51,858 bases of DNA from Macrostomum lignano. Its lineage: Eukaryota. The stretch spans positions 1 to 51,858 of the forward strand of contig NIVC01004281.1 of NCBI GenBank assembly GCA_002269645.1, given 5' to 3'. Positions 201 through 22,178 of the stretch are shown in pieces. The position numbers and the translations under genes are program-made. The notes beneath the pieces are model-generated. The model was given only the letters and a program-made list of their open reading frames with translations. It was not told the DNA's origin and searched no databases. The stretch's first letter is position 1, and every line of letters starts with the position of its first letter.

Positions 201-3200
201 ATGGCGGCCCCACTGAAGACGTCCGGCCCTACGACTACGAAGGCGTGGAGCCGCAGTTTATCAGGCGGGCCGAGAAGGAGCTCAACGAGAAGCCCAGCCA
301 GCTGCCGGCCCACATCGCCAGCCTGAGACGCTGGCTGAGCAGCATGCCGCACCTCAGGTGCCGGACAGGTGAGTGACAGCTTGTGGCTCTGCTGCAGGCC
401 AATCATCTTACAGGGGGATTGTAGGAACGGCTGGACAACTGTGGCGGTTCGGGAAGAGGGGAATTAGAGGAGATCTGGGGAAGAGGGGAATTAGAGGATA
501 TCTGGGAAAGAGGGGAATTAGAAGAGATCTGGGGAAGAGGGGGAAGAGGGGAATTAGAGGAGATCTGGGGAAGAGGGGAATTAGAAGAGATCTGGGGAAG
601 AGGGGAATTAGAGGAGATCTGGGGAAGAGGGGAATTAGAGAAGAACTAGGGAAGAGGGGAATTAGAGGAGATCTGGGGAAGAGGGGAATTAGAAAAGAAC
701 TGGGGAAGAGGGGAATTAGAGAAGACATGGGGAAGAAGGGAATTAAATGAGATCTGGGGAAGAGGGGAATTAGAGGAGATCTAGGGAAGAGGGGAATTAG
801 AAGAGAACCGGCGAAGAGGGGAATTAGAGAAGACCTGGGGAAGAGGGAATTAAATGAGATCTGGGGACGAGGGGAGTTAGAGGAGAATAGAGGAAGAGGC
901 GAATTAGAAGAGAATAGGGAAGCTCTATCGCACAAAGTGAAGTCGCAAAGACCAGTCTAATTTGAGGCTGCACAGAGCGCAGCCAAGCGTGCTAGAACAG
1001 CAATAGAGCAGCTCAGAAACAAAAACTTGGTATTTATTATTGTTGTTTAAACTAAAAAACAAGCCCAAGAATTACTTTGCGAATCGGGGCAGCAAAACAA
1101 AGGAATAAAATTTGGGTTGCCAATCAACCAGGCTGAATATCCGCAGATAGCGCAGCGATAAAATAAAACTGGATTACATGCTGGATGAAGCAGGGAGCTG
1201 CGAGGTGCAGCTGCAAGCCTGGATAAACACATTTTATACCCAACTAATCTCAGTGTTGCAGTTGGCCTAAAATATTCGTTCTTCACAGACAGCAGAAAAA
1301 AAATCTATTAAAACGAGCAACTTTCTACAGTAGGAACAATATTAATAAAAGCAGAAAAATGAGTGAAAACGGAAACAAGCGACAGGATGGGAGATTACAA
1401 AATATTGAGTTGCTGGATAATCAGAAGCGGCATGCAGTCAAAGCGGGCTGTGTGGGGCTAACAAGACGGATTTTAGTGCTTGAAAAATAAAACAAAACAG
1501 TAAAAACCACGGGACCGCCACAATGACAAGTTTATCTGTCCAGCCAGAGAGTCGGCAGCCAACGGCTCAGCGCTCCGAGCTGCTGCACTCGCCATTGTGC
1601 CGCTGGCTCGGCTCGGAGTCGGCGGCCGAGGCGGCGCCTTCGGTGAGGGCGAGGCGGCGATTCTCCGCGGTCAAAGGGATCCACCAGGAACTGCTCCGGA
1701 GTGTAGTAGGACTGCGGGGGCGGCGGAAAAGGGGCAGTTGATGCGCAATATGCTGCTTAACTACTGCCAGTAGAGTAGACACCAGAGGGGAATCCAAGAC
1801 ACCAGAGGGAATCCAAGACACCAGGAGGGGAATCCAAGACACCAGAAGGGAATCCAAGACACCAGAGGGGAATCCAAGACACCAGAAGGGAATCCAAGAC
1901 ACCAGAGGGGAATCCAAGACACCAGAGGGGAATCCAAGACACCAGAGGGAATCCAAGATACCAGAGGGGAATCCAAGATACCAGAAGGGAATCCAAGATA
2001 TCAGAGGGGAATCCAAGATACCAGAGGGGAATCCAAGATATCAGAGGGAAATTCCAAGACACCAGAAGGGAATTCAAGACGCCAGAGGGGAATCCAAGAC
2101 ACCAGAGGGAATTCAAGTCGCAGGCTCATCCCAGCTCACCAGCCAGGCCACCACGCGGCCAGCGCCAGGCAGAGTCTCCAGGTCGGGCAGTCGGGCAGCC
2201 GCGAACTCGGCACCGGCCAGCGAGGCGGCTCGAGCCCGGCGCTTAGCGGCGGCGGCCGCAGCGAAGGCGGCCAGCTGGACGGCGGCGACTCCGTCCGCTT
2301 CAGCGCGCGTTGCTGATTCTCGTCATCGCCATCGTCGGCGGAGAGTCGGACAGCAAAGTCGGCGACGCGGCTAAACAGTCGGCGACGGAGCTTCTGGCGA
2401 ATGCCTTCAGGAGCCTCCGACTGCTGCTGCTGCTGTTGACGCCGCTCCTTCCCGGCCTCGCCGTCCTCGGGCAGGTAGTGGTCCACGCAGCGGTCAACCC
2501 AGGCCACCACCAGCTCGCCGCTGTCCTCCGACAGCCGCGTGCACTTGGCCAAGCCGTAGGCTTTGGCCGACTGCGCCTGCGGATTTGCGGATATGGCGAA
2601 GACGAGTTCAGGCATTCATGCGGCATTAGCCCGAATCAGTGTACTTGTTGAATCCCCTAACCCTAACGTAGCAGACAAGCAGTCATGCCCGACCCGCTCA
2701 CACAGGGTGTACTGCAGTCCAGAAATGTTCTCATCGCCGGGCATGTACAAACTCTGCAGTTTAGAGGCTGGACCTCAATGGTGTGAATAGCACGGCAAGC
2801 CCTAAGGACAATTTCCGTTATCGAACCCGGGACTTCAGCACGAGAGTCACACATAGCTATTCTGCGCCCCATCCTAAGCAACCCTGGTGGCCCTATTCGG
2901 TGCAGTTCGATGGCCTTATTGAGCGCAGGTTTCTCTTCTGCGACGTGCCAACTTTCCGCATCACAGCATGGCCACTGCCCCACCCCGTCACCTTGGCAAC
3001 GGCGCTATTCACCGGTGCCATCAGCGTCGGCTGGACAGCGTCGCGCGCCGAGGCGACCAGCTCCTGGGCAGTGGCCTCCTTCACGGCCGGACAGCGGGCC
3101 TCCAGCCGGTCCAGCAGCTGGGCGCAGGCCAGGCGGTCCAGGCGCGCCACAGCGGGCTCGAAGCGCGCCAGCAGCGGCGCCGCGGTGGCAGCGGCACGGC

Positions 3201-4761
3201 GCAGGCCGCCCTCGGTGAAGCCGGCGGCGGAGCGGACGCTGGGGCTGGCGGACAGGGCCCAGTCGTAGCAGCTGGCGGCCCGCTGCCAGGCGGAGGCCAC
3301 GGCCGGATAGGCGGTGACCCGTTGAACAAAATCGGCTACCATGGCGATTGAAGCGAATTTGAAATTTGCTGAAAAATAAACAGCAGTTTAGGATGGCGTC
3401 GCGTATAGCAACAAGCTTTTTACACTGGGTTGAAAACAGATATAAGAACTAAATTTAGAGACTTACATAATCTGGAGAAATTCAATTATGCCTTGAGCAC
3501 TAAAGTAAACAGACTCAGAGATATGCCTCAACCCAGACTCAAATAGTCACTTTCTTGGCTGCAGCAGCAGATAAGCGCCGGGGTCAAAGGTAACCCCAGA
3601 CACTGCAATGTGAACAGCATTGCCTGCCCTAGACAGGAAAACAGACGGAAGACCAAAGTCTAAAGTCAATTCTACAGATAGTAAACAGCACTATTGCCAC
3701 CAGAAGTGCGAAAACTTGCGAAATATTTCGTCATTATTGGGCTCCGAAAATGGGATTTTTTTACTTTGCTCGAATTTACGCGAATTTGTGTCTTGCCCAA
3801 CACACATGAGGATTAAGCCGCATCGAATCACTTCGCTCCGCAGACGACCGATTCCTGCTGCGCTTCCTTCGCGTGGCCAAGTTCGACCAGAGCCGCGCCA
3901 GATGCTGCTGGACAACTACCTGACCATCCGCAAGTCGCCCAAGGGCACGCCGTCATGGTTTGACTACCCTTCTGTGGACAGTCCAGAGGTTAAGGTGAGG
4001 CTGATTACTATTTAGCCAACTTTCTGGCAAACAGAGGCTCAGAAGTCCTACGCCACTTCCTTCGGCAGGAGTACCTCAGCCATCCTTTCCACGTGTTTCT
4101 CGGACACACAAGCGAAGGCGAGGGCGTCTACGTGTCCAACATGGGCTACTGGGACCAGCAGAAGATGACGTTCGATCAGCTGATCCGCTGCATGTACATG
4201 TCAGTGGACGCGGTGCAGCTGGACCAGTACAGCCAGATCAACGGCATCAAGGTCCTGATTGACATGAGCCGGTCCAATCGAAATCAACTGAGCTTCTTCG
4301 AGAACCGCAAGAACTTCTTCTCTCTGATGCGCAACTGGCAGGACGCCAGTCCCAATCGCACTAAAGCTGTCATTTTTGTGAACGAGCCGGCGTTCTTTGA
4401 CGTGATCTTCACCCTGATCAAGAACGCGCCGTTTCTCAAGGAGAAGTTCAAGAAGAAGCTGCACAAGGTCGGCAAGGACTACGCCAGGCTCAGGAAAGTC
4501 ATCGGGGAGCAGGACGCCGACCGTCTGCTGCCCAAGGAGCTCGGCGGCAGCAACGGCACCCTGCAGGAGCTGATGGAATGGACAAGAAACAACTTCGGCA
4601 GCGAGCGGATGCACAGGGAGTGGCGCCTTCAGCGGCAGGAGATGGAGGTTGACGAATCCAAGCGGCTGCCAACGACCAAGGACTACTTGCGCACCGAGGA
4701 CAGCGCAGCGGACGCGACCACTGGTATCCAGGGCACCTTCACCAAGCTCAACGTTGACTGA
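201..4761 (+). CDS. CRAL-TRIO domain lipid-binding protein (alpha-tocopherol transfer protein-like / clavesin family), 3 exons
   Basis: Exons ~201-368, 3844-3994, 4069-4761 with GT/AG ends. Reads ...AEKELNEKPSQLPAHIASLRRWLSSMPHLRCRT|DDRFLLRFLRVAKF (CRAL-TRIO N-domain), then INGIKVLIDMS, AVIFVNEP, LLPKELGG and terminal GIQGTFTKLNVD. Needs +1 base at the C-run 208-211 (to join ATG 201) and at 3898-3899; exon 2 is 151 bp where phases require 152. Confidence 0.88.
451..920. repeat. 27-bp purine-rich minisatellite (CTGGGGAAGAGGGGAATTAGAGGAGAT)n in CRAL-TRIO intron 1
   Basis: About 17 direct copies visible; source of ORFs 373..750 and 408..935. Confidence 0.95.
1532..3342 (-). CDS. Perilipin (PAT-domain lipid-droplet protein), 3 exons, nested antisense in CRAL-TRIO intron 1
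   Basis: Exons 3342-2992, 2576-2140, 1711-~1532, all phase 0 with GT/AG. N-terminus VQRVTAYPAVASAW...PLLARFEPAVARLDRLACAQLLDRLEARCPAV matches the PAT domain; exon 2 has VDHYLPED typical of the perilipin C-terminal bundle. Exon 2 is 437 bp (needs 438; probable lost base at 2291-2292). The true stop in exon 3 is uncertain (1532 or 1567). Confidence 0.8.
1787..2117. repeat. 20-21-bp minisatellite (GACACCAGAGGGGAATCCAA)n in perilipin intron 2
   Basis: About 16 tandem copies. Confidence 0.95.
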
Positions 4762-5595: not shown

Positions 5596-6180
5596 TAGGC
5601 GTAGCAGCAGCCGCTGAAAGATCAGGGAGGGGGTAGCAGCAGCCGCTGAAGGATCATCAGGGAGGGGGTAGCAGCAGCCGCTGAAGGATCAGGGAGGGGG
5701 TAGCAGCAGCCGCTGAAAGATCAGGGAGGGGGTAGCAGCAGCCGCTGAAGGATCATCAGGGAGGGGGTAGCAGCAGCCGCTGAAGGATCAGGGAGGGGGT
5801 AGCAGCAGCCGCTGAAAGATCAGGGAGGGGGTAGCAGCAGCCGCTGAAGGATCAGGGAGGGGGTAGCAGCAGCCGCTGAAGGATCAGGGAGGGGGTAGCA
5901 GCAGCCGCTGAAAGATCAGGGAGGGGGTAGCAGCAGCCGCTGAAAGATCAGGGAGGGGGTAGCAGCAGCCGCTGAAGGATCATCAGGGAGGGGGTAGCAG
6001 CAGCTGCTGAAGGATCAGGGAGGGGTAGCAGCAGCCGCTGAAGGATCAGGGAGGGGGTAGCAGCAGCCGCTGAAGGATCAGGGAGGGGGTAGCAGCAGCC
6101 GCTGAAAGATCAGGGAGGGGGTGGCAGCAGCCGCTGAAGGATCAGGGAGGGGGTAGCAGCAGCCGCTGAAGGATCAGGGA
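5596..6180. repeat. 32-35-bp minisatellite (CAGGGAGGGGGTAGCAGCAGCCGCTGAAGGAT)n, intergenic
   Basis: About 18 tandem copies, some with an extra CAT. Confidence 0.95.
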
Positions 6181-6557
6181 GCAAGAAGCATATAGTTCCC
6201 AGGAACATGGCCCACCCCAAACTTTCAAAGTCAAGAGTCATTTAGCATAGCAGGTATACAATACAATGTCATTTGCAGAGACGCGGAGATTAAATTAAAT
6301 AATCAGTTAAGAACAATTAACTTCGGTATAACTAGAACAGAAAACGATTTGCTTGCAGTATTAATAATAATACTACTTGCAGTAGGGTTTGCAATGTGAG
6401 AAAGGAAAATTTATAGCCAAACAGAGCCTAGCGACTTATAAAAAATGCAGTTTTAAAAATCTCCAGTCTCAAAACATCTTACAGCGGTGACCTTCATATC
6501 TGATTTTATTGCTTGAAGAAACTTACACCAGCCCTTGCTGGTCACGCGGGTCCATTG

Positions 6558-8839
6558 CTAGTACAGACCCCGGTTGCGGCTGCAGTGCCGGCACACTGTA
6601 GTGTACATGTTGGCACCGCGGCACACTCTGTGGGGGCGACGGGGTGAAGATGATGAAGAGGCTGTAATGTGAGCTTTTTAGAATCTGAGACAAGCTGGAG
6701 AGGTGGGACCGGGATCTGAGAAAGGCACAAGAGATGGCACGGGGATCTGAGACAGGACCTGGAGATGGGACGGGAATCTGAGACAGGAGCTGGAGATGGG
6801 ACGGGGATCTGAGACAGGAGCTGGAGATGGGACGGGGATCTGAGACAGGAACAAGAGATGGGACGGGGATCTGAGACAGGAGCTGGAGATGGGACGGGGA
6901 TCTGAGACAGGAGCTGGAGATGGGACGGGGATCTGAGACAGGAGCTGGAGATGGGACGGGGATCTGAGACAGGAGCTGGAGATGGGACGGGGATCTGAGA
7001 CAGGAGCTGGAGATGGGACGGGGATCTGAGACAGGAGCTGGAGATGGGACGGGGATCTGAGACAGGGCAAACACGAATACAGCTGACTCACTTGCACAGC
7101 CAGGGCCCCATCAGCAGCTGGGCAGCGGAAACCGATGTGCCGTAGCCAACAGAACCGAATCGCATCGCCATCGCGGCGGCTGGCGTCATCGGCTGCCGAT
7201 GCTGCGCGTTCCGGTAGGCAGCAGCAGCAGCAGCCGCAGCAGCAGCCGCTGCGGCCGCCGCCCGACTCTGCGGCGCTACCATCCGGATGGGCGTGCCAGC
7301 GACGCCCGAGACCGGGACGCGAAGGAAGCCGTAGGGGACGGATAGGACAGCGGCTGGTCGTGCGGCGCCGCCAGCGACGGCAGCGGCCGCCCTAGCGGCT
7401 GAGGCGGCTACAGCGGCGGAGACGGCAGCAGACGCAGCGGCGGAAGCAGCGGCAGACAGCGGCGGTTGAGGCGGAGACTCGCGTCGCTGGCGCCGCTGTT
7501 GCGGCTGCTCGGACTGTTCGGACTGCTGCGAGTTCCTGCGGTCGGTGTTGAAAACCGGGACGAGCTCCCGACAGCTGTTGACCATCTGCGGCGTCGGGGT
7601 GGTCGGATTGCTGGAGCCGCCGCCGACGCCTGCGCTGCCGGTGGCCGAGGTCGCCAGATCGAGGCGCGGCTGCTTGGCAACCGCGGCGGCTGCGGCAGCG
7701 GCGGTGGCGGCGGCAGTGGAGCCGAGCACGGGTGCCGTAGGCGGCCGCGGCGGGTTCGAGTCCTGCGAGGCGCAGCGCCTGCGTTTTCTGGCCGGCATGG
7801 CCGCGGCCGCGGCTACAGCGGCGGCGGCCACGGCGGCTGTGGCGGCGGCATCGGAGAAAGCAGCCGTGCCAGCGGCGATGGGTCGAAGCGCCACCTCCGG
7901 CCAGTCGGACCGCAGCTGCGCCGGCGAGGCGTCGACACAGACGACGTCAATGTCGGCAGTAAAGTAGGCGGCCAGGTCAGAGGCGGCGAGCTGCCGGGCC
8001 TGGACCAGTGTGCCGGGGTGGGCGGCCTTGACAGCGCGTGCGGCGGCGGTGCAGACCTGGATGATGAGTAAGGCGCTGAACATTGGATAATGCGGACACA
8101 AGATACCAGAGGAAGTATAGGGGGCTCTGACTCACACAGGACACTGTACAGGGGGCTCTGACTCACAGGACACTGTACAGGGGGCTCTGACTCACACAGG
8201 ACACTGTACAGGGGGCTCTGACTCACAGGACACTGTACAGGAGGCTCTGACTCACACAGGACACTGTACAGGGGGCTCTGACTCACACAGGACACTGTAC
8301 AGGGGGCTCTGACTCACACAGGACACTGTACAGGGGGCTCTGACTCACAGGACACTGTACAGGGGGCTCTGACTCACACAGGACACTGTACAGGGGGCTC
8401 TGACTCACAGGACACTGTACAGGAGGCTCTGACTCACACAGGACACTGTACAGGGGGCTCTGACTCACACAGGACACTGTACAGGGGGCTCTGACTCACA
8501 CAGGACACTGTACAGGGGGCTCTGACTCACAGGACACTGTACAGGGGGCTCTGACTCACACAGGACACTGTACAGGGGCTCTGACTCACACAGGACACTG
8601 TACAGGGGGCTCTGACTCACACAGGACACTGTACAGGGGCTGACACACACAGGACACGGTACAGGGGCTGACACACACAGGACACTGTACAGGGCCGCTG
8701 ACACACACAGGACACTGTACAGGGGCTGACACACACAGGACACTGTACAGGGGCTGACACACACAGGACATTGTACAGGGGCTGACACACACAGGACACT
8801 GTACAGGGGCTGACACACACAGGACACTGTACAGGGGCT

Positions 8840-8906
<67 letters not shown>

Positions 8907-11900
8907 GACAGAGGCTGATACACACACACACACACAAACACAGGACACTGTACAGGGGCTGACACACAAACACAGGACACTGTACAGGGGCTGACACACA
9001 AACACAGGACACTGTACAGGGGCTGACACACAAACACAGGACACTGTACAGGGGCTGACACACAAACACAGGACACTGTACAGGGGCTCACGTACACAGG
9101 ACACTGTACAGGGGCTCACGTACACAGGACACTGTACAGAATCTCTGACAAGCACACAGTCTCCAAGCGCCTCAATGCCTCACCTCGGCGCTGGAGCACT
9201 CCAGCATCACCAGATCGGCGCCGAGACGGCAGGCGCGCAAAGCTTCGGCCTCATCGGCGCAGACTGCGGCCACCCGGCCAAACGGAGCAGCGCAGCGCCT
9301 GGCGCCGGCCAGTGCGGACGCAACGCCGCTGCCGCCGCCCCCGCCGGCTGCGGTTGTATCGACAATCACGACAGCGCCGCCAGTTGACGCGGTTGAAGAG
9401 GCAGACGGTCGGACCCCGCCTACAAGGAGGCCGTGTCGCTCCAGCAGGCGCTGGCCGGGCGTGCAGCGGCTGTCAGAATCGGCGCAGACGGAGCCGGGCC
9501 AGTCGCACAGGGCGGCCTTTTCAACTAACCTGGCAGAGATAGGGGAAGGGCAAACATGTCGCTAACTCGTATTGCTCGATGCTGGCTGGCGTACTGCCAG
9601 TAGTATTATGCAAGAATAAGTACACAAAAACATGGTGGCATGATTGCAAGAATCAACGCGCCAACGCTGGCCTGGAAAAATATTGCAGATTATGGCATTA
9701 ATCTGCATAATCTGCAATATATTTTCAGGCCAGTATTGCGCAACACTAACACACTGTTTCTGGAGTTCAGTTTGGGGGATTCTGGAGATCAGTTTGACTA
9801 GACCATCGAAGTCTCACCTGTTGGCATAGGTGGCTAACCCGGACGCCCTGGAAAGCACAGCTGGCAGCAGCCGGCGGGCCCTGGCCAGGCAGACTGGGCT
9901 GCCGCTGATGGTGGCCACCCGCTGCGGCACGGAGGAGATGTAGGCGCCTTCAGCCACTGACCAGCTGGCTTCGCAGCGCAGACGGGTGAGCAACGCATCG
10001 GCAAATGGGACGCCAGCGAGTACACCTGAGCGAGCAGAGTTGGTTAACCAAAATATTCAGCATCCGAGTGATTTCTATCAACAAGTAATGCGAAGGCTGG
10101 TAGATAGATTAAGATACGAGGTCTCGTAGGTAATCATATCTTGAAATTGAAGTTTTTTATAGCATGCAAGATTAAGTGCTTTAGCTTGGTCAAAATTTTG
10201 CCAGTAACATTTCTATATAATACTTCATAAAGTATCACAAAGCAGTCACTAAAAGAGACTTAGTACACAAAAGGCTAAGCTTCAAATTAGTGTCAGAAGA
10301 GATTCTTTAAGTTTAACGAAAAATACAGCTTTGAAAATTGATAGCTCTATTAGTTAAATTATTTTTAAACTTGAAACTTACAACTAAAACCAAGTCAATT
10401 CAGTCACGAACTAGTATAGGTCCATGAAATCTCAATACGCATTATTTGTTAGCTTGTAGAAAGTTAACAGATTTTATTCTGTGCAATCTACATTTACATA
10501 TATTGACTACATCTCTATATCATTGAGAATTGCTTTACTTACACTCATACAGAAAAATAAACAACTGTAGGAATATGGATGTACTTTTGTGTTTTTAGAA
10601 AAACACCAACATGAACAATACTAAATTTTTGAACATTATATTTACAGTATTACAAATTGTAATAACTTGTATTGCAGAGTTTATATTATTATTAAGTATA
10701 TTTTTCAGCTAAATTTGATAAAAATTACCTTTGAGAAGCTAAATATACCAATATTTGAGTATAATATAGTATTTATATATTAAAAAATAATCACTATTGT
10801 GACCCAAATGCCTATCTGAACTGGTTTGTAACTTGTAAGCAAAGCAGACACAAGGGGAAAAGTATTCTAGGGCAAAATCTCCATGGCCAAAACAGTTGGG
10901 GGGAAACCGCCAGAATTCATATATTTATGGTAAATATTAGGCCTACAACTAATTTTTTGTGATTTTTTTATTTTAAATGAGCTTTAAACTTACAATGAGT
11001 TTACATTGTTGGTGTACAAAAAATGACAAAATTAAAATTTGGCATAATCTCCACATGCATAGATGGAATATCTAATTTTTGATAAAAAAAGTTCCCAAAA
11101 ATTAAAAAAAACTAGATTGAAAATTATGTTTAACTTACTAAGAAATTAAAAAGTAAAACAAAAAAGTAAAAAAATAGTTTCTTATAGTTCAGTAAAATGT
11201 AAGACAATTTTTTATTTAACTTTTTAGTAAAAATAAAAGAATTGCAAGTCTAAACTATAGCGTGTATTTTATGGTTGTCTTGGCATTTTTTGTATACAAT
11301 GTTAGTCTATTGGCATACAAGAGCTAAGGAAGCAAATTTCAGGGCGATTTCCTTGCCCTGAGGCAACTCTCACCTTTTAGCAGATTTCTGATACTCTAAA
11401 GGAAATGACTAAGTCTTTCAAACACTGCAACTAGCAATTTTAATACTTAGAACAAATTGTATTATCTTGCAACTTGCTTACTTTATAGTTGGCAGCAAGT
11501 TGTCTCTCTTGGCTTGCACTGAGCGTCTATTTATACCTAAATTATAAACTGTTTATAACAATAACAAAGAATGTTTTGCAAGAATATTTTTGGATGTCAT
11601 AAAAGTTAAACAAAGAAAATTATTTTTAGTGCGGTTTTGAAATATGATTTTCTAAGAAACATAATATGCAAAAACAAGTAATTATAGAACATATATACAA
11701 TATTATCAATGCCCTCATACATGCGCAACCTCCAAATTTCGGTCGGCCATGCGACTTAGTTTTAACAAAAATGCGACGTAGTTTTTGGCCAAAAATGCGA
11801 ATTACATGTAAAAAAACCCGAAAGCAAAATTAACGCAACTTTGGGTAAACGGCAGGAGTAACTATGACTGTCTTATAAAGCCAAAATGCCTCGTCAGCTA

Positions 11901-13507
11901 CTTAGTACTACTACTCTGTGTTTTTTCGGGTTGGCATTTTTGCGACTTCCTTGGTTGGCCGCCAAATCGGTCGGCCGGATCGGCCGACTCGGCCGACTGT
12001 TGCGCATGTATGAATGCCCTACTTCAAGTTCTCAATTTTTTAAAGTCAAGTTTTTAAATAGAAATTATATTTTTATATAAAATAGATAAAAATATAGTTG
12101 GCATTCTTTTGGTTAACAATTACCTTAAATAGTGATCATCAGCTCAAACAATGACAATCAGCACTAAAAACAGTTGTAATTGACATGAAACAAAATAAAA
12201 AGCTAGCAAACTGACTGTTTATTTCAAAAGATGATAAGATTATTATAGCTTATATTTTACCTTCAGTTTACAATCACCAACATGTATATTGCCTACTAAA
12301 ATGATTGCAAACCAAAGCTGGCCATAGTAAAGCCTGTCAAATAATTTCAATTGTCAAGTTGCAAGTTTGAGCTTGCAGCCTATATATATATCACTTTCAG
12401 TTTACAATCACCTAAACATATATTGCCTATTGAAATGATTGTGAACCACAGCTAGCTATAGAAAAGCATATCAAATACAAAAATATAGTCACGTGCAGAA
12501 AACTGCTGCTCATTCTAGATCAAGGGCATTGAAATCCCCTCTCATCTTTGTACCCCTTTACATTCAGTTTACAATCATTTCTATATATGCACTCTACTGA
12601 AATGATTACAAACTGAAGCTGGCAATATACCTTTACTATAAGTGTATATCCATTATATAGGCCTACAATATTAATTTTAACCTAGCTTCAGTTCATAGGC
12701 CCTAATCATTTCTATTTGTATTATATATTTAAATGATTGTATACCAAAGCTAATATATAAGCATCATCTAACAAACTGCACTTTCAACTTTGGATATTTT
12801 TTCAGTTTTCAGTTTTGAACATGCCATTTTTATGCTGCAATTGATCAAAATATAAGGTGACCATAAACCAAAAGTGGCAAAATAGAAGGTGATTGTAAAC
12901 CAAAAGAATGCCATTAGGTTAAATCAAGGGTTGGCATTAAAGAATACAAGCTAAAAAGAATAACATTTTAGGATTAATACAATTATTCCAAATGGAAAAA
13001 CCAATTAACTAAGGAAAAAAACTAGAGTCCCTAGACAGTAGTTATTAGTTAATAAGATCCTATAAAGACTTTGTCATTAGACATCACTTATTTTTATAGA
13101 CCTTAAAAAAGCCTTCTAATAATTATAGGGCTTAAGCAGCTAAGCACTAATATTCATTATTAGTATAAAATTTTTATTCATTAAATCAAATGCCCAGGCT
13201 AGGCAATAGTTTCTATTTCATCTAATCTAAATAGACATATGCCAATAATTTTTTATAGGTTCTATGCAATATACATACCTTTTGTTTCAAAAATGACTGC
13301 ACATAATACAGGGTGTTCATTAAAACTATTAACTTCAGTATCATCTTCACAAGTCTGACCATTTTCTCCAGTGTTGTGAAAATTTAGTCTGCTTGCATTA
13401 GAATCAAATTGAACAAAAACTCCACCAGAGTTGCTTATAATATTATCCTCCTCAATCCATAGTTTTACAATGTTCTTTATTGCACTAAGAGAAGTAATAT
13501 GCGTCAT
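6558..13507 (-). CDS. QPRT: Quinolinate phosphoribosyltransferase (NadC/QPRT)-like protein with degenerate active site, low-complexity tail and putative C-terminal zinc finger; 5 exons, ~605 aa
   Basis: Exons 13507-13279, 10025-9818, 9529-9184, 8056-7092, 6627-6558; all GT/AG, phases consistent, total 1818 bp with no internal stop. Colinear with animal QPRT: IVKLWIEED, G|VLAGVPFADALLTRLRCEASWSVAEG, LSRASGLATYA, TPGQRLLERHGLLVGG, GADLVMLE, ADIDVV. The last exon is inferred; without it the frame ends at TGA 7088. Confidence 0.85.
6683..7066. repeat. 31-bp minisatellite (GATCTGAGACAGGAGCTGGAGATGGGACGGG)n in the last QPRT-like intron
   Basis: About 12 tandem copies. Confidence 0.95.
8120..9140. 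repeat. Compound 28-31-bp minisatellite (GACTCACACAGGACACTGTACAGGGGGCTCT)n with embedded (CA)n tracts, QPRT-like intron 3
   Basis: Tandem units fill almost the whole intron; pure (CA)n runs at ~8843-8902. Confidence 0.95.
11716..12012. mobile_element. Non-autonomous hAT-type MITE (297 bp)
   Basis: Perfect 14-bp TIRs CATACATGCGCAAC / GTTGCGCATGTATG, flanked by the 8-bp duplication AATGCCCT (11708-11715, 12013-12020). Confidence 0.88.
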
Positions 13508-13752: not shown

Positions 13753-14773
13753 TGCAACAGTTGCCTATTATTTTGCCTACTTTGCCTATTTTTGTCTATT
13801 TTGTCTACTGATTTCACGTATAATACGACTATTTTTTTATATTCGATTGAAGAATTCTGTGCCTAATAAATATATGTTTTTAATATTGTTAAGTAGTAAA
13901 ATAGCATCAATAGTAGCTTTTAGCCTAATTCTGTATGTTTAATTAGTTTTAATACGTACGCCATTTTTGCCTGTAATACTATAAAAGGGAGAGAGAAAAA
14001 TAAACGAAGGAGAACTTGCGCTCGTTGGTTTCCTCCGCCTGCCAATTTTAGACTCCGGTCTTGGCCCCAGCGGTTGTAATTGTTCCAAAAATAGATCTGA
14101 ATTGGTCTTAGTCATTTAAAGGCGCTCCGCCTTCCCTCTCCCACGGAGCTTCGTACAGCCAGAAGCGTACAGGCCTCCTTTCCCCACTCTCCCCAGGACG
14201 TGCAGTCCTACCCCAAGCCGCTCCCCTTTCCTCCTCTTTCCCAGAGAATATACGCCCCGCCCCTCAATCCTCTCCCCTCTTTGTGGACATTCTGTCTGCA
14301 CAGGTGTACAGCCTTATTCCCTCGGACTTACAGTCTGATCCTCCCCCAAGCATCCCCGCTCCCGACCCTTCCTAGTAGAAATTTCCCACATTCATTAGGC
14401 AGATTGCCTTCTTATCTAATGCTGTCAGCATTCCCTATTAGTATTTAGAAGTTCCCATTAGTGTGCTTTCCCAGGCAACTCTGATCCATCGCGAAGCCCT
14501 TAATTCCCCTCTCCCATCTTTATTCCCTCGGACTAGTTAAGTTTAATTTAGACAGTGTCTTGCCGCTCGGACACTCACGCCACCAGGAGCAACCATTGGC
14601 TTACTCCTATTAGTAATAAAACTAGCACATCTATCAGAAATCCCCAAGAATCCCATAACTTACCCTACAACAAATTTGGTGTCAGCAATAGGAAACTTCC
14701 CTCCCCCAAGACCCCTATAACAGATTTTGGTAACAGCGGTGGGATTTTCTTAAAAATAAACAGCCCTGTAACA
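13753..14773 (+). repeat. 5' LTR
   Basis: Differs from the 3' LTR, by eye, at one substitution (GGGAG/GAGAG after the TATA-like motif) and two single-C indels. TATAAAA at 13980-13986. Confidence 0.97.
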
Positions 14774-14777
14774 AATT

Positions 14778-14790
14778 TGGTGGCAGCGGT
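14778..14790 (+). other. Primer-binding site, probably tRNA-Leu
   Basis: TGGTGGCAGCGGT 4 nt after the LTR end; complementary to the remembered 3' end of metazoan tRNA-Leu(AAG/TAG), ...ACCGCUGCCACCA. Confidence 0.75.
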
Positions 14791-14856
14791 AAAGGATCAG
14801 AATCTGGAGAAACGCGCAACCCCAGCCTAATTTCCCATCCCAATCCCTGAAGTATA

Positions 14857-15822
14857 ATGGCCGCAGGAATCAATGAAGCCCTTGCGCTCTTAGCCGAAGA
14901 GCTCCGCAACCGACTCGAATTAGGCCCCCTTAGACATGTGAAAATCCAGAAATACCTCCCCAGCCAAGATATCAGAATCTGGCTTACCGCATTTGACCAA
15001 AGATGTGAAAATGAAGGAATAGATGAGGAAAACCGAAAGCAGGAATTATTGACCAACTTAGATCTAAGCACTGCGTTTGCAGCAGTTCAACGCCTCAACC
15101 TCCCAGCTAATCTCCCCTATGAAGAATTCAAAGAGAGACTGATCGAAAGATTTGGAAAAGTAGGTAGCTCCGCCGAATTTCGCGAAGAGTTTAGGAATCG
15201 CTGCCAAGGCAGAAACGAATCCACTGACAGCTTTGCCGATGCCCTGATCGAATTAGCCTCCCGCGCATTCCTGAACATGGATGCTGAGCAGAGAGAGGAA
15301 GAACTGGTTGAGCAGTTCATTAAAGGTGTGAGAACCCCTCCCGACACCCGTGAAAAGCTAATCTTTGCCCAACCTGCTAGTCTCCAAGCCGCCCGCAGAA
15401 TGCTGCGCAGAATTGAAGCTGCTTACCAGATGTCCCATAAAGGTGGAATCCGAGTAACTAAGGAAGAAAAAGAGGAGTATAAAGGCAGAACTGACCAGTT
15501 GATCATCAATCAGCAGAACCAGATTGATCGCCAAGAACGAGTCATCCAGGACTTAAAGAAGCAGCTAGCAGCGCAAAGCGCTCCGCCACCCCAAGCCTAT
15601 CCCCAGCAACAGTATAGACAGCCACCCCCTCAGCAGTATAGACTGCCACCTCCTCAGCAGTACAGACCGCAACCCCAGCAGCAGTTCAGACAGCCACCCC
15701 AGCTGATGAACCAACCACCAAGGCGTGAACCCCCAAGAAGGAATGAGCGTCAGCCCCCCAATCCCAGATATGAGCCGCTGAAGTTCCGTAACCCCCGTGA
15801 CTCCCAGAAGTCGGGAAACTGA
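14857..15822 (+). CDS. gag: Gypsy Gag (321 aa)
   Basis: Capsid-like core (WLTAFDQRC, YEEFKERLIERFG, RCQGRNESTDSFADALIELASRAF, EQFIKGV), Q/P-rich PPPQQYR repeats, no CCHC knuckle seen, ends SGN-stop. Confidence 0.92.
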   Translation: MAAGINEALALLAEELRNRLELGPLRHVKIQKYLPSQDIRIWLTAFDQRCENEGIDEENRKQELLTNLDLSTAFAAVQRLNLPANLPYEEFKERLIERFGKVGSSAEFREEFRNRCQGRNESTDSFADALIELASRAFLNMDAEQREEELVEQFIKGVRTPPDTREKLIFAQPASLQAARRMLRRIEAAYQMSHKGGIRVTKEEKEEYKGRTDQLIINQQNQIDRQERVIQDLKKQLAAQSAPPPQAYPQQQYRQPPPQQYRLPPPQQYRPQPQQQFRQPPQLMNQPPRREPPRRNERQPPNPRYEPLKFRNPRDSQKSGN

Positions 15823-18800
15823 GAAGCCAGGGTCGAGTTAAGAGGCCACGCCCCTCAGGCCAAAATATTGCTTACTCTCCGGCCTCCCCATCATTCGAAA
15901 ATGCCCCCCAACCAAAATACCGGCAACCTCCCCAGTACGGTTTCCGCTATCCCCGCAAAACCTCCCATGTACAGCCAATGCCTGTAAATAATGCGATATC
16001 TGTCTCCCCCAATAATTTTTCACTTCTTACCTTTGATGATGCCGACGATGCTATGCCAAATGCCCCCCATGACCCTCATGTGTACAATTCCCCCCATGCG
16101 ACCGCCTCTCATGTAACCAATGCGACCAAAGCTTATGTACATCATGCGTCCGCACCCCGTGTACCCACTGCGCTTGCACCCCATGTACCCCATGCGAGTG
16201 AAACCAATAATGCTCTATCCAGTGCTGAAACCCGCTCAAAGAAGCGACAAAAGCCAAAAACCAATTCCCCATCTCGAATCGACCTGACCAAGCTAGAAGG
16301 CTATGAAGCTGTAATAGTCGGCGATATCCAGAAAGAATCGATTAATTTCTTGCTAGACACAGGCGCCAGAAATAACTTCCTGAGCCGCTCAACCTGGTCT
16401 AAGCTATTCCGTGCCGATCAAATCCGAGACACTAGCAAAAGCATCAGTACATTTGACGGTACCCCAGTACAATTAGAAGGAGAAGTATCTGCCCAAGTGA
16501 AGTTTGGCGATATCCAAATCGAAGTAGACTTCCTCCTATGCCGACACGATTGCGATAATATCTTAGGAATGGAATTTTTCCTGTCCCAATGTGAAAGCAT
16601 TCAGCTAGCCAAAGGAATGCTAGTGCTTAATGAAGGTACCTGTATACCCATGCAGTATACCCGCCTACCCGTGAAAGTTTGTCGAGTTTATACTCAAGAA
16701 AGAGTAATCATCCCAGCTAATAGTGCCCTCCGAATACCCGTGAAGTTAGCCAAGAATTGTGAATCGAATTATGGCACCCCCATGACCATTGAAGCCATTG
16801 GCGATACTGTCCGAACCCGAGATTTCTCCCTAGAAATGGTTCCGACCCTAGTAACCATGAAAGAAGGCAAAGGAATTGTCGAAATTATTAACCGCCACCC
16901 AGTAGACGTGAATCTAACTAAAACTTCCCTAATTGGCTTAGCCAGACCCATGAAAGCTAAAGATCTAACCTATTGGCAAACCCCAACTCCCAACCCCCAA
17001 CCCTCTGCGAAAGTCAACCAGACTCAATGTACTGAAGATTCCTGGATTAATGAAGTGAGTCTTGGCCCTGAACTGTCAGATGAACAGCGACAAGCAGTCA
17101 TCGACTTAATGAAAGAAAACCGTGAAGCCTTTTCCCAGAATGAATTAGACATGGGCCTGACACATTTAGTAACCCACGAAATCTCTATCAAAGACCCCAC
17201 CCCCGTTAGAATCCCAGCTAGACGCATCCCCCCACACTTGCAAAAGCAAGTTGACGCCCAATTAGACGATATGTTAGCCAAAAACTTAATTAGACCCTGT
17301 TATTCGACTTACTCCACTCCCCTAGTAATTGTCCCCAAGAAAGACGGTTCTATCAGAATCGTGAGCGATTTCCGAGTGCTCAATTCAAGAGTTAATTATT
17401 ACCCCTACCCCCTCCCCAATATCCAAGAGACCTTCTCCCACCTAACTGGTAGCCAATACTTTAGCAGCCTTGATTTAAACTCAGGATACTGGCAAGTCCC
17501 CATCAAAGAAGAAGATAAGCATAGAACCGCCTTCTCCACCCTAACTAGAGGCCAATTTGAATACCAAGTAATGGCCCAAGGACTTTCCAATGCCCCCGGA
17601 ACCTTCCAACGCCTGATGAATTTAGTACTATTAGGAATCCAACACAAGTTCGCCATGTCCTATATCGATGACATAATAGCCTACTCCCAAACTTTTGCCG
17701 ACCATTTAGAGCACTTAAGAGAAGTATTTAAGCGACTTATTGCCGCAGGTCTGAAGTTGAGACCCAAAAAGTGCAATCTTTTCCATCACGAGTTGAAATA
17801 TCTAGGACACGTGATTGGCCGGCAAGGCATTCAAACAGACAAGACGAAGATTGAAGCAATTCAAACTTGGCCCCGTCCCAAAGACGTAAAGGAACTACGC
17901 AGTTTTCTTGGCCTATGCAATTATTATTGCCGATTCGTGAAAAATTATGCCGAAGTGGCTCACCCCCTATTCCAATTGACTCGAAAAGGAGTCCAGAATT
18001 TCCAATCTAAGTGGAGCAAAGTGCATGACGAAGCCTTTGAGTCCCTGAAGCAGAGAATGATGTCTACTGAAGTGTTAGCCTACCCCGAATATGTCGAAGA
18101 TGAAAATGTGAAAATGGTGCTCGACACAGATGCCAGTGACGACAGGATTGGCGCATGCCTTGGCCAAATCCAGAGTGATGGCATAGAGCGACCAATAGCC
18201 TATTTTAGTAGAGCAATGAAAGAATCAGAGAAGCGATACCCCATTACCCGGAAAGAATTGTTAGCCCTTGTCGACGCTATGAGGCATTTCAGATTTTATC
18301 TGATCGGCAAGAAATTCTTAGCCCGAACTGATCATAAAGCGATAATTTGGCTCATGAGACAAACTGAAGCAACCGGAATCCTAGGAAGATGGATAGAGCG
18401 TCTGAATGAATTCAGGTTCGACATTGAACACAGAAGCGGCGCAAAACATTCCAATGCCGATGGATTGTCGAGAAGACCAGCTGAGATAGCTGAAGCCCCT
18501 GAAGTATCCCCTGAAGCAGCCCCTGAACTTGCTGGAACAGCACCTGAAGTTTCCGAAGTCCCTGACGCAGCCACTGAGCCTGCTGAAGCGATCCTTGAAA
18601 CCCCTGAAGTACCTGAAGCGATTCCTGAGAAAATTGAGCCAATCCCTGAGAAAGTTGAGAAGTTGACCCCTGTTCCCCTGAGAGATGAGAGTGCTCCCGC
18701 TGAAACTAAGGACAACCCCATGTCCCAGTCACCTGAAGCTCTGATAGAAAGCGAGACCCAGCTTGAATATCCCGAATCTAGGATACAGCTGAATGTCTCA

Positions 18801-22033: not shown

Positions 22034-22178
22034 TTATATCGCTGACGAACATTTATTCTGCAATTTTATTAACTTCCATTATTCTTGTTTATTAACTATT
22101 TTGTTCTATCATTGCTATTTTACGTATCGTTTTGAAAATTCTCACTATATTCAAATTTATCAAGCCAGGAAGGCCAGT

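What the first reader, a model, noticed from the sequence alone, without database searches (positions are those of the whole stretch)
6558..13507. Intact QPRT paralogue that has lost its catalytic residues: candidate pseudoenzyme with a new function
Seen: five exons splice into a stop-free 605-aa frame, colinear with animal QPRT over ~300 aa. Established: QPRT binds quinolinate and PRPP through GTRKT (human R138/K139), HR (H160/R161), VKDNH (K171), EVE (E201), LDN (D222), ASGG (248-250) and SMG (G270); numbering is from memory. Here these read DSDSRCT, RPSASSTAST, IVDTT, AAV, LEC, QARQ and CVD, so essentially every ligand-binding motif except the R102-equivalent is replaced while structural positions persist. 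Exon 1 also carries a ~35-aa insertion. Inference: selection keeps the fold but not NAD-synthesis activity, so this may be a scaffold or sensor.
Basis: partly seen in the sequence, partly recalled or inferred. Interest (0 to 1): 0.82.

Follow-up and report, generated by a model that had tools for sequence, protein, structure and literature searches.

The report
Dead QPRT enzyme fused to zinc-ribbon tail
This is an intact five-exon gene for a quinolinate phosphoribosyltransferase look-alike that keeps the enzyme's fold but has lost most substrate-binding residues, and it belongs to a so far undescribed flatworm family joining this dead enzyme to a disordered tail and a terminal zinc ribbon.

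Summary
On the minus strand, five exons with canonical GT-AG borders (13507-13279, 10025-9818, 9529-9184, 8056-7092, 6627-6558) give a 605-aa frame. Residues 68-302 match human QPRT at E=2.5e-30, and the model has the QPRT fold (pLDDT 83). Of eight substrate-binding positions invariant in 99 canonical homologues, one is kept, two change conservatively (K139 to R, D222 to E) and five change radically. The phosphate-binding SGG loop is gone. The protein scores 78.6 bits against a 198.4-bit nadC cut-off.

The gene is the orthologue of a family found in trematodes, cestodes and a monogenean. That family has a degenerate QPRT domain, a roughly 260-aa disordered tail with a basic NLS-like patch, and a C-terminal four-cysteine zinc ribbon. 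All four window introns match flatworm orthologue introns in position and phase, including one inside the zinc ribbon.

Published work reports that flatworms have lost the kynurenine/de novo NAD pathway. I therefore read this as an exapted, non-catalytic QPRT scaffold. Its exact role is inferred; a nuclear or SH3-linked adaptor is my best guess. "Paralogue" is unproven, and expression in this organism is untested. A young LTR retrotransposon lies 245 bp upstream of the start codon.

The parts
13279..13507 (-). Exon 1. ATG at 13507; codes aa 1-76 plus the first base of codon 77. Contains the N-terminal helix of the QPRT N-domain and a roughly 30-aa lineage-specific insertion (aa 33-68, window 13411-13304). 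GC is 32%.
   Evidence: The N-terminus aligns from residue 1 with cestode orthologues. The AF2 model has a helix at aa 7-24, and the insert has low pLDDT. The donor falls in phase 1 in the Gly codon that starts GVLAG, the same position and phase as in Calicophoron, Dicrocoelium and Mesocestoides.
10026..13278 (-). Intron 1 (3253 nt, 30% GC).
   Evidence: GT...AG borders. tblastn finds no alternative QPRT-like exon inside it.
9818..10025 (-). Exon 2 (aa 77-146). Rest of the QRPTase_N domain, including the retained R102 equivalent (R128).
   Evidence: Pfam QRPTase_N 28.6 bits. tblastn HSPs from 14 QPRT or QPRT-like proteins end at the exon borders. The donor is in phase 2 in the R codon of YAN[R]L, as in four flatworm orthologues.
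9530..9817 (-). Intron 2 (288 nt).
9184..9529 (-). Exon 3 (aa 146-261). First two thirds of the QRPTase_C barrel. It carries the replaced R138/K139, H160/R161, K171, E201 and D222 positions.
   Evidence: The phase-0 donor lies at the ancestral QPRT intron position, which is also present in Mytilus and Tetraodon QPRT.
8057..9183 (-). Intron 3 (1127 nt), almost entirely 31/60-bp minisatellite plus an AC microsatellite.
   Evidence: arrays at 8115-8837 and 8134-9139.
7092..8056 (-). Exon 4 (aa 262-583). It begins with the end of the QPRT-like domain (to about aa 322, window 7874). The rest is an Ala/Pro/Arg/Ser-rich tail predicted to be disordered. Tail features: NLS-like PARKRRR (aa 349-355, 7795-7775), PxxP-rich NPPRPPTAP (7756-7730), R/Q-rich patch (7507-7478), poly-Ala (7261-7217), MRFG motif (7174-7139), and the first Cys of the zinc ribbon.
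   Evidence: Tail motifs are colinear with the trematode and cestode tails. Full-length AF2 gives pLDDT 30-45 for aa 347-577.
6628..7091 (-). Intron 4 (464 nt), mostly a 31-bp minisatellite (6683-7066). It interrupts the zinc ribbon one codon after its first Cys.
   Evidence: Both trematode orthologues have an intron at the same position and phase (phase 2, C[K/R]xC). If the intron were unspliced, the frame would stop at a TGA immediately after ...PWLCK, giving 584 aa.
6558..6627 (-). Exon 5 (aa 583-605 plus TAG). It completes the C-terminal four-cysteine zinc ribbon CKVCRGANMYTTVCRHC (aa 582-598, window 7096-6582 across the intron).
   Evidence: The ribbon aligns with the C-x2-C-x3-N-x6-C-x2-C ends of the Calicophoron, Dicrocoelium, Mesocestoides and S. 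japonicum proteins, with the four Cys and the Asn invariant. pLDDT rises to 64-68 with two short strands.

Best explanation
The locus encodes a non-catalytic descendant of quinolinate phosphoribosyltransferase. It is orthologous to a flatworm-wide family in which a QPRT-fold domain without a working active site is fused to a long disordered tail and a terminal zinc ribbon.

Shown here:
- The gene is intact and spliceable.
- The QPRT two-domain fold is retained.
- Five of eight substrate-binding residues are radically replaced and the phosphate-binding SGG loop is gone.
- The domain-tail-ribbon architecture and all four intron positions are shared with trematode and cestode orthologues.

Inferred:
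- The lineage no longer makes NAD from quinolinate. Published work reports that flatworms have lost the kynurenine pathway.
- The protein was therefore kept for a structural role. QPRTs are obligate dimers that assemble into hexamers, so the dead domain most likely serves as an oligomerisation hub.
- That hub would display several copies of the tail. The tail carries a basic NLS-like patch, suggesting nuclear import. It also carries proline-rich PxxP segments. An S. mansoni clone annotated Qprt, probably the orthologue, was fished out by the SH3 domain of the Src kinase SmTK3 in a yeast two-hybrid screen.
- The small eL40/NZF-like zinc ribbon would bind a nucleic acid or protein partner.

In short, I read it as a multivalent adaptor, not an enzyme.
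For: - Gene model and open frame.
- Homology and fold: E=2.5e-30 to human QPRT; pLDDT 82.9, pTM 0.84; Foldseek top hits all QPRT; core pLDDT 85-93 even with only flatworm sequences in the MSA.
- Loss of catalytic residues. One search gives nadC TIGR00078 at 78.6 bits against a 198.4 cut-off, with mussel QPRT at 319.8.
- Roles of H160, R161 and K171 in binding quinolinate/NAMN: PMC4726147.
- Family: one search finds degenerate QPRTs among the hits. name them: Mesocestoides corti VDD74806.1, Calicophoron daubneyi CAL8092355.1, Dicrocoelium dendriticum CAH8449879.1, Schistosoma japonicum cDNA AAW26440.1, Hymenolepis diminuta, Protopolystoma xenopodis, and Dibothriocephalus latus.
- Architecture: searches show the same domain-tail-ribbon layout, and one search shows the invariant Cys/Asn of the ribbon.
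- Introns: all four window introns coincide in position and phase with flatworm orthologue introns, and two of them are absent from mussel and pufferfish QPRT.
- Constraint: dead domains are still 37-60% identical between trematodes and cestodes, which indicates constraint.
- Pathway context: schistosomes lack de novo NAD enzymes, and Trp/Asp do not rescue NAD (PMC7252647). The kynurenine pathway is lost in flatworms except basal Rhabditophora (bioRxiv 10.64898/2026.06.05.730449).
- SH3 link: an S. mansoni 'Qprt' clone (E=3e-18 to mouse) was a two-hybrid partner of SmTK3-SH3 (PMC2734992).
- Zinc ribbon: weak profile matches to eL40 (E=0.006-0.02) and TAB2/3 NZF (E about 1-2). The flatworm tails give sub-threshold Pfam hits to Zn_Ribbon_1, DZR and DUF7577.
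Against: - There is no transcript, protein or activity evidence for this organism.
- The window protein is as far from the flatworm relatives (27-31% identity) as from canonical QPRTs (32%). The NJ tree that groups it with them (94.5% bootstrap) also drags in unrelated degenerate Blumeria QPRTs, so it suffers long-branch attraction. Orthology therefore rests on introns and architecture.
- The window protein is more degenerate than its relatives. It lacks the R161-, H174- and E201-equivalents that most of them keep. Its zinc-ribbon loop is one residue shorter.
- Two replaced residues are conservative (K139R, D222E) and R102 and D172 are kept, so a residual or altered ligand site is not strictly excluded.
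- The tail is extremely Ala-rich and GC-rich, which suggests mutational drive.
- A very young LTR retrotransposon sits 245 bp upstream of the ATG and may disturb transcription.
- Nuclear localisation, oligomerisation, SH3 binding and the ribbon's ligand are all inferences. The identity of the S. mansoni two-hybrid clone with this family is likely but was not checked at sequence level.
Confidence: 0.6

Rival explanations
1. It is still an enzyme: a divergent phosphoribosyltransferase, for quinolinate or another acid, that uses a remodelled active site.
For: - The fold is fully retained.
- R102 and D172 are kept, and K139->R and D222->E are conservative.
- Public databases name the flatworm relatives as nicotinate-nucleotide pyrophosphorylase.
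Against: - R138, H160, R161, K171 and E201 become S, S, T, V and V, and the SGG phosphate loop is lost.
- These positions are 8/8 in 99 canonical homologues.
- The nadC equivalog score is 78.6 against a 198.4 cut-off.
- The pocket residues that remain are not the same in the window protein and its flatworm relatives, so no alternative site is conserved.
- Schistosomes cannot use Trp or Asp for NAD (PMC7252647).
- The database names are automatic, by domain.
Confidence: 0.07
2. In this organism the copy is a dying or silenced gene. On this view it is a recently inactivated unitary pseudogene whose frame has not yet been hit, shaped mainly by GC-biased drift and repeat invasion.
For: - It is the most degenerate member of the family.
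- Exons 2-5 are 61-73% GC with 29% Ala in the tail, while exon 1 is 32% GC.
- Introns 3 and 4 are filled by minisatellites.
- An LTR retrotransposon with 99.7%-identical LTRs lies 245 bp upstream of the ATG.
- No expression data are available.
Against: - There are no in-frame stops where about 15 are expected (P about 1e-7), including in AT-rich exon 1.
- All eight splice sites are canonical with conserved phases.
- All four ribbon cysteines and the Asn are kept, even though an intron splits the ribbon.
- Fold-determining residues are kept well enough for E=2.5e-30 and pLDDT 83.
- The retrotransposon insertion is so recent that it cannot explain the long-term divergence.
Confidence: 0.15
3. 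The 605-aa model is a chimera. A short QPRT-like gene (exons 1-3 and part of exon 4) and an unrelated GC-rich open frame are joined only by prediction, and exon 5 is spurious.
For: - GC-rich low-complexity DNA stays open in several frames: exon 4 has only 3-5 stops in the other frames.
- Read-through at the exon 4 donor stops immediately at a TGA.
- Pfam finds nothing in the tail.
Against: - Orthologues from four flatworm genera have the same single-protein layout, including an S. japonicum cDNA.
- The tail landmarks are colinear: basic patch, R/Q-rich patch, MRxG motif and ribbon.
- The exon 4/5 junction reconstitutes the four-Cys ribbon at exactly the intron position and phase seen in both trematodes.
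Confidence: 0.03
4. The dead pocket is a metabolite sensor. It would bind quinolinate, NaMN or a related host-derived tryptophan catabolite without turnover, and signal through the tail.
For: - Pocket-forming fold elements and the TPG loop, E176 and R128 are retained.
- From general knowledge, pseudoenzymes often keep ligand binding.
Against: - The carboxylate-binding residues H160, R161 and K171 (PMC4726147) are all replaced by small or neutral residues here.
- R102 is not conserved in most flatworm relatives (GEL, SEH, YEK, CEL, CEN, GEQ), and they keep R161/H174/E201 equivalents that the window protein lacks. No common ligand-binding set therefore exists across the family.
Confidence: 0.08

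Closest known systems
Canonical quinolinate phosphoribosyltransferase (QPRT / NadC / BNA6; type II PRTase, Pfam QRPTase_N + QRPTase_C; e.g. human 5ayx, 4kwv, 2jbm)
   Same: It has the same two-domain fold and colinear sequence over about 235 residues (E=2.5e-30; Foldseek TM 0.84-0.85 on the target). It shares the ancestral phase-0 intron in the barrel. Structural residues W98, G118, R136, G158, TPG169-171, E176 and G184 are kept.
   Different: - Five of eight substrate-binding residues are radically replaced and the SGG loop is lost.
- It fails the nadC equivalog cut-off.
- It carries a roughly 30-aa N-domain insertion, a 3-residue Ser/Thr-rich insertion in the H160/R161 loop, a roughly 260-aa disordered tail and a zinc ribbon, none of which canonical QPRTs have.
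- It evolves about twice as fast: 27-32% identity to all comparators, against 60% between mussel and pufferfish.
Uncharacterised flatworm 'QPRT' proteins: Mesocestoides corti VDD74806.1 (577 aa), Calicophoron daubneyi CAL8092355.1 (537 aa), Dicrocoelium dendriticum CAH8449879.1 (512 aa), Schistosoma japonicum SJCHGC09401 / AAW26440.1, plus partial models from Hymenolepis, Dibothriocephalus and Protopolystoma
   Same: - The layout matches: degenerate QPRT domain, low-complexity tail with a basic K/R patch and an R/Q-rich patch, and a C-terminal four-Cys/Asn zinc ribbon.
- All four window introns match theirs in position and phase.
- Similar N-terminus.
   Different: - Identity is only 27-31% in the domain.
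- The window protein has lost the R161/H174/E201 equivalents that most of them keep.
- It has the exon-1 insertion and an Ala-rich rather than Gln/Asn/Gly/Pro-rich tail.
- Its ribbon loop is one residue shorter, and a Trp lies two residues before the first Cys.
- Its introns are 288-3253 nt, against 30-42-nt micro-introns in the orthologues.
- It lacks the extra trematode intron.
Degenerate QPRT homologues of the powdery mildew Blumeria (CCU82247.1, EPQ66240.1)
   Same: This is another obligate parasite lineage with QPRT-fold proteins that have lost several catalytic residues (0/8 and 6/8 kept; names).
   Different: They are fungal, have no zinc-ribbon tail and arose independently. They group with the flatworm proteins in the NJ tree only through long-branch attraction.
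Small zinc ribbons of the eL40 / RanBP2-NZF type
   Same: It has a four-Cys motif with an invariant Asn and similar spacing. The profile of the five ribbons hits eL40 at E=0.006-0.02 and TAB2/TAB3 NZF at E about 1-2. The flatworm ribbons give sub-threshold hits to Pfam Zn_Ribbon_1, DZR and DUF7577.
   Different: No Pfam model reaches its cut-off. The window's own ribbon hits none of these three models; its only Pfam hit is a sub-threshold Zn_Ribbon_Prim match. The resemblance to RanBP2-type fingers is a recollection of spacing, not a tested membership.
ModD (TIGR01334), a bacterial QPRT-like protein of unclear function
   Same: It is a QPRT-fold relative that is not the NAD-pathway enzyme.
   Different: The window protein scores 26.3 bits against a 178.85 cut-off, so it is not a member.

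Membership tests
QPRT / NadC enzyme (EC 2.4.2.19) | QRPTase_N + QRPTase_C two-domain fold | tested here: met
   Pfam QRPTase_C 24.8 bits (cut-off 23.1); QRPTase_N 28.6 bits on exon 2 (cut-off 27). PDB phmmer E=2.5e-30. AF2 pLDDT 82.9. Foldseek top 48 hits are all QPRT/NadC.
QPRT / NadC enzyme (EC 2.4.2.19) | Score above the curated equivalog cut-off (NCBIfam TIGR00078 nadC, 198.4 bits) | tested here: not met
   78.6 bits. Flatworm relatives score 138-141 bits. The mussel QPRT control scores 319.8 bits.
QPRT / NadC enzyme (EC 2.4.2.19) | Quinolinate/PRPP-binding residues (human R102, R138, K139, H160, R161, K171, E201, D222) and the SGG phosphate loop | tested here: not met
   The window has R, S, R, S, T, V, V, E at these positions, and SGG becomes RQ-gap. 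All eight are kept in 99 full-length canonical hits. The roles of H160, R161 and K171 come from PMC4726147. The roles of the other residues are from my recollection of the QPRT structural literature.
QPRT / NadC enzyme (EC 2.4.2.19) | Catalysis of quinolinate + PRPP to NaMN | not testable with these tools
   There are no biochemical data. [quoted passage not shown]
Flatworm dead-QPRT + zinc-ribbon family (undescribed; e.g. VDD74806.1, CAL8092355.1, CAH8449879.1) | Degenerate QPRT domain (at most 3 of 8 catalytic residues kept) | tested here: met
   The window keeps 1/8 and the relatives keep 1-3/8.
Flatworm dead-QPRT + zinc-ribbon family (undescribed; e.g. VDD74806.1, CAL8092355.1, CAH8449879.1) | Long low-complexity tail with a basic K/R-x-R patch soon after the domain and an R/Q-rich patch | tested here: met
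   The tail alignment shows colinear PARKRRR / PKKTR / KKLR / KRLK motifs and R/Q-rich segments. The tail is predicted disordered.
Flatworm dead-QPRT + zinc-ribbon family (undescribed; e.g. VDD74806.1, CAL8092355.1, CAH8449879.1) | C-terminal four-Cys ribbon with conserved Asn at the extreme C-terminus | tested here: met
   C16, C19, N23, C30, R31 and C33 are invariant in the five-sequence alignment. The window's loop is one residue shorter.
Flatworm dead-QPRT + zinc-ribbon family (undescribed; e.g. VDD74806.1, CAL8092355.1, CAH8449879.1) | Family-specific intron positions and phases ([G]VLAG phase 1; A-x-[R/K]-L phase 2; C[K/R]xC phase 2 in the ribbon) | tested here: met
   4 of 4 window introns coincide. 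The first two are absent from Mytilus and Tetraodon QPRT, and the ribbon intron is shared with both trematodes.
Flatworm dead-QPRT + zinc-ribbon family (undescribed; e.g. VDD74806.1, CAL8092355.1, CAH8449879.1) | Closer in sequence to family members than to canonical QPRT | tested here: inconclusive
   27-31% identity to family members against 32% to canonical QPRT. The NJ clade has 94.5% bootstrap, but the Blumeria control shows long-branch attraction.
RanBP2 / NZF-type zinc finger | Match to the curated domain model (Pfam zf-RanBP) | tested here: not met
   No zf-RanBP hit appears even at E<=10 for the window or the flatworm ribbons. There are only marginal PDB profile hits to TAB2/3 NZF (E about 1-2) and better ones to eL40.
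Non-functional pseudogene | In-frame stops, frameshifts or broken splice sites | tested here: not met
   No stops or frameshifts occur in 605 codons, and there are eight canonical splice sites. P of an open frame by chance is about 1e-7.

The most novel reading that the evidence does not exclude
A core NAD-synthesis enzyme was exapted in the flatworm ancestor into a hexameric, catalytically dead hub. On this reading, the hub's disordered low-complexity tails and terminal zinc ribbons make it a multivalent nuclear RNA- or protein-binding scaffold wired to Src-family kinase signalling in the gonads. It would be a flatworm-specific regulator that outlived the loss of the whole kynurenine pathway. 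It would also be a parasite-specific protein, widespread among parasitic flatworms, with no host equivalent.
Probability: 0.2. Interest if true: 0.8.

Novelty: new variant of a known kind. Interest (0 to 1): 0.66.

Why it matters
Pseudoenzymes derived from kinases, phosphatases and proteases are well studied, but I found no description of a QPRT-derived one. Here the dead enzyme is conserved across trematodes, cestodes and a monogenean, and it carries an added zinc ribbon.

Three things would follow if the reading is right:
- It would show what happened to the last enzyme of the de novo NAD route after flatworms abandoned that route.
- It would correct public annotations that still call these proteins active nicotinate-nucleotide pyrophosphorylases. 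This matters for metabolic reconstructions of parasites, in which NAD salvage is being considered as a drug target (PMC7252647).
- It would point to a flatworm-specific protein, with no catalytically dead counterpart in the vertebrate host, that may link to Src-kinase signalling in schistosome gonads (PMC2734992).

The window copy adds the most divergent member so far. It sits outside the sampled Neodermata in a weak tree, which may push the origin of the family deeper into the phylum.

Tried and rejected
- The full-length protein search was swamped by poly-Ala words and returned one hit. The domain-only search found only canonical QPRTs at about 30% identity.
- The exhaustive representative search found no hit below E=1e-30, so no close orthologue is in about 15 billion proteins. 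The flatworm family emerged only when I tabulated catalytic columns over the 150 hits.
- The profile search with the family alignment returned only two flatworm members because of the word-index cap.
- Species identification failed. The retroelement pol ORF is not on record. Rfam and tRNA scans found nothing. Looking up further top hits gave snakes, turtles, mussels and unnamed metagenome proteins, and no flatworm canonical QPRT. The organism is therefore inferred to be a flatworm or close relative from the gene itself.
- The phylogeny groups the window with Neodermata, but the Blumeria control shows long-branch attraction, so I do not rely on it.
- dN/dS could not be computed because no close orthologue DNA is available.
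- RanBP2-finger membership is not supported by Pfam.
- I looked for an alternative exon 1 or a second QPRT locus in the window and found none.
- PMC4726147 does not mention R102, R138 or K139 in a searchable form, so their roles rest on my recollection plus their invariance.
- PMC4217691 says nothing on flatworms.

Full report
**1. The observation**

The minus strand between 13507 and 6558 carries five open segments. They join through canonical GT-AG sites with consistent phases into an 1818-nt CDS of 605 aa plus TAG. The exons are 13507-13279, 10025-9818, 9529-9184, 8056-7092 and 6627-6558. Nucleotide shuffles of each exon expect 14.9 in-frame stops in total, and the joint probability of none is about 1e-7. 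Exon 1 is 32% GC and has 5 and 13 stops in its other frames, yet it is open in the coding frame. If the last donor is not used, the frame ends at once at a TGA, giving 584 aa.

**2. It is a QPRT homologue with the QPRT fold**

- phmmer against all PDB chains gives human QPRT (4kwv, 5ayx, 2jbm) at E=2.5e-30 over aa 68-302. Pig, yeast and bacterial NadC follow.
- Pfam finds QRPTase_N (28.6 bits on exon 2, cut-off 27) and QRPTase_C (24.8 bits, cut-off 23.1).
- An AF2 model of aa 1-330 with a 56-sequence alignment has mean pLDDT 82.9 and pTM 0.84. Low confidence is confined to aa 47-57 within the exon-1 insertion, the Ser/Thr-rich loop 191-196 and the last five residues.
- Foldseek's first 48 PDB matches are all QPRT/NadC. 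Human QPRT leads at E about 2e-26 with TM 0.84-0.85 on the target.
- The core stays at pLDDT 85-93 when only nine flatworm sequences form the alignment.

**3. The active site is gone**

The results are:

| Human residue | Window residue | Type of change |
|---|---|---|
| R102 | R128 | kept |
| R138 | S166 | radical |
| K139 | R167 | conservative |
| H160 | S191 | radical |
| R161 | T192 | radical |
| K171 | V202 | radical |
| D172 | D203 | kept |
| E201 | V235 | radical |
| D222 | E256 | conservative |
| S248-G249-G250 | R282-Q283-gap | loop lost |

- H160, R161 and K171 contact the carboxylates of quinolinate/NAMN in the human structures (PMC4726147). The roles of the other residues are from my memory of the QPRT literature.
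- Independently of memory, all eight positions are identical in the 99 canonical hits that cover them. The window protein keeps 1/8.
- Against the curated nadC equivalog model the window protein scores 78.6 bits (cut-off 198.4). A mussel QPRT scores 319.8 bits.

The nuance is that two replacements are conservative.

**4. It is not an isolated oddity**

No close orthologue exists among about 15 billion proteins. The best hit is 108 bits at 32% identity. When I tabulated the catalytic columns over the 150 best hits, a set of other degenerate QPRTs appeared. Their source names show they come from parasitic flatworms:
- The trematodes Calicophoron daubneyi, Dicrocoelium dendriticum and Schistosoma japonicum (a cDNA, SJCHGC09401).
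- The cestodes Mesocestoides corti, Hymenolepis diminuta and Dibothriocephalus latus.
- The monogenean Protopolystoma xenopodis.

The full-length members (512-577 aa) have the same layout as the window protein. A dead QPRT domain is followed by about 220-290 aa of low-complexity sequence, and the protein ends in C-x2-C-x3-N-x6-C-x2-C. The window protein ends in C-x2-C-x3-N-x5-C-x2-C. The four Cys, the Asn and the Arg after the third Cys are invariant in the five-sequence alignment. The tails are colinear: a basic K/R patch about 25-30 aa after the domain (PARKRRR here), an R/Q-rich patch, an M-R-x-G motif, and then the ribbon.

**5. Introns settle orthology and the gene model**

I mapped the exons of four flatworm orthologues and two canonical QPRTs on their genomic loci (L001-L006). 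All four window introns coincide in position and phase with flatworm introns:
- Phase 1 in the Gly codon that starts GVLAG: shared with three flatworms and absent from mussel and pufferfish.
- Phase 2 in the R/K codon after the (Y/F)A(N/S/R/A) motif: shared with four flatworms and absent from the canonical genes.
- Phase 0 in the barrel: also present in mussel and pufferfish, so ancestral.
- Phase 2 in the codon after the first ribbon Cys: shared with both trematodes.

The last intron shows that exon 5 is real and that domain, tail and ribbon are one gene. By contrast, sequence identity is uninformative: 27-31% to the family and 32% to canonical QPRT. The NJ tree places the window protein as sister to Neodermata at 94.5% bootstrap, but it also attracts the unrelated degenerate Blumeria proteins, so I discount it. 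The organism itself could not be named. I infer a flatworm, possibly outside the sampled parasitic classes.

**6. Context**

- Schistosomes are reported to lack all de novo NAD enzymes, and Trp or Asp do not restore NAD when salvage is blocked (PMC7252647). That study did not list this QPRT-like gene.
- A 2026 preprint reports loss of the whole kynurenine pathway in flatworms except basal Rhabditophora.
- An S. mansoni cDNA annotated Qprt, with only E=3e-18 to mouse Qprt, was recovered as a two-hybrid partner of the SH3 domain of the Src kinase SmTK3 (PMC2734992). I think this is the schistosome orthologue, captured through its proline-rich tail, but I could not check the sequence.
- I found no paper that describes these proteins as pseudoenzymes.

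**7. How it probably works**

Shown:
- The fold is kept and catalytic residues are lost.
- The tail and ribbon are conserved, and the tail is predicted disordered (pLDDT 30-45 for aa 347-577).
- The last 25 residues are more ordered, with two short strands.

Inferred:
- The dead QPRT domain serves as an oligomerisation hub, since canonical QPRTs are dimers of dimers and hexamers (PMC4726147).
- The hub would present several tails with an NLS-like patch, PxxP segments and a small zinc ribbon.
- The ribbon's nearest solved relatives are the eL40 ribbon (E=0.006-0.02) and, marginally, NZF fingers.
- Together this would make a multivalent adaptor, probably nuclear.

A sensor role is unlikely, because no pocket residue set is shared between the window protein and its relatives. 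Residual catalysis is unlikely for the reasons given in section 3.

A recently silenced gene cannot be excluded. This copy is the most degenerate. It is strongly GC- and Ala-biased in exons 2-5 but AT-rich in exon 1. Minisatellites fill introns 3 and 4. A complete LTR retrotransposon with 99.7%-identical LTRs lies 245 bp upstream of the ATG.

**8. Verdict**

The word 'paralogue' and the 'sensor' option are not supported. Novelty is a new variant of a known kind (pseudoenzyme). Interest is moderate to high.

Noticed in passing
window 13753-23197 (+), LTRs 13753-14773 and 22179-23197: A complete Ty3/gypsy-type LTR retrotransposon of about 9.4 kb. Its LTRs are 1021 nt and 99.7% identical, with TG...CA ends and a 4-bp flanking duplication. 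It has a gag-like ORF at 14857-15822, a pol ORF at 15978-19979 (protease, RT, RNase H, integrase), and two further ORFs (20051-20629, 21002-22033) without Pfam hits. I counted no stops or frameshifts inside the gag-like and pol ORFs. The element lies only 245 bp upstream of the start codon of the QPRT-like gene, so it may affect that gene's promoter.
   Followed up: partly
window 6558-13507; whole window: There is a sharp compositional split inside one gene. Exon 1 and intron 1 are 30-32% GC (GC3 0.20), while exons 2-5 are 61-73% GC (GC3 0.74-0.79). The whole window is a mosaic of blocks at about 23-33% GC and about 50-71% GC. The cause is unexplained; GC-biased conversion and isochore-like structure are possibilities.
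   Followed up: partly
window 6683-7066, 8115-9139, and 451-913, 1777-2117, 5601-6181, 32659-33582, 34793-35595, 35880-36602, 38779-39192, 41831-42329, 43126-43749: GC-rich minisatellites with periods of 18-44 bp fill introns and spacers throughout the window. Introns 3 and 4 of the QPRT-like gene are almost wholly such arrays, both with a 31-bp period. Many of the long 'ORFs' in a mechanical ORF list are just these repeats.
   Followed up: partly
window 24945-26528 and 27244-28640: Two arrays of the same 186-bp satellite (8.5 and 7.5 copies, 99% matches) lie in opposite orientation about 700 bp apart. Together they form a large inverted repeat of tandem arrays.
   Followed up: no
window 2893-3342 (-), 4093-4761 (+), 32169-37255 (+), 41369-41824 (-; second ORF 40340-40981 untyped): The neighbouring genes are a perilipin-family exon (Pfam 54.5 bits), a CRAL/TRIO-domain exon (71.5 bits), a lipase-maturation-factor gene (LMF1 89 bits, LMF1_C 168 bits) whose introns are full of minisatellites, and an alpha/beta-hydrolase exon (Abhydrolase_1 33.6 bits on ORF 41369-41824; the nearby ORF 40340-40981 has no Pfam hit). 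Three of the four are lipid-related. No QPRT or NAD-pathway gene is nearby.
   Followed up: partly
loci L001, L004, L005, L006 (flatworm orthologues): Inside the QPRT-like domain the trematode and cestode orthologues have micro-introns of 30-42 nt, apart from one 163-nt intron in Mesocestoides. The same intron positions in the window gene hold 288-3253 nt. The trematodes also keep the ancestral QPRT intron before A-[VI]-x-x-[IA]-R that the cestodes and the window gene have lost.
   Followed up: partly
proteins P0123, P0124 (Blumeria graminis / B. hordei): Powdery-mildew fungi, which are obligate biotrophs, also carry QPRT homologues with degenerate catalytic residues (6/8 and 0/8 kept). This is an independent case of QPRT decay or exaptation in a parasite.
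   Followed up: no
public records of P0024/P0168, P0037, P0044, P0153: UniRef names these flatworm proteins 'Nicotinate-nucleotide pyrophosphorylase [carboxylating]' or 'Quinolinate phosphoribosyltransferase [decarboxylating]', although they keep only 1-3 of 8 catalytic residues and fail the nadC equivalog cut-off. This is probably an over-annotation by domain.
   Followed up: partly
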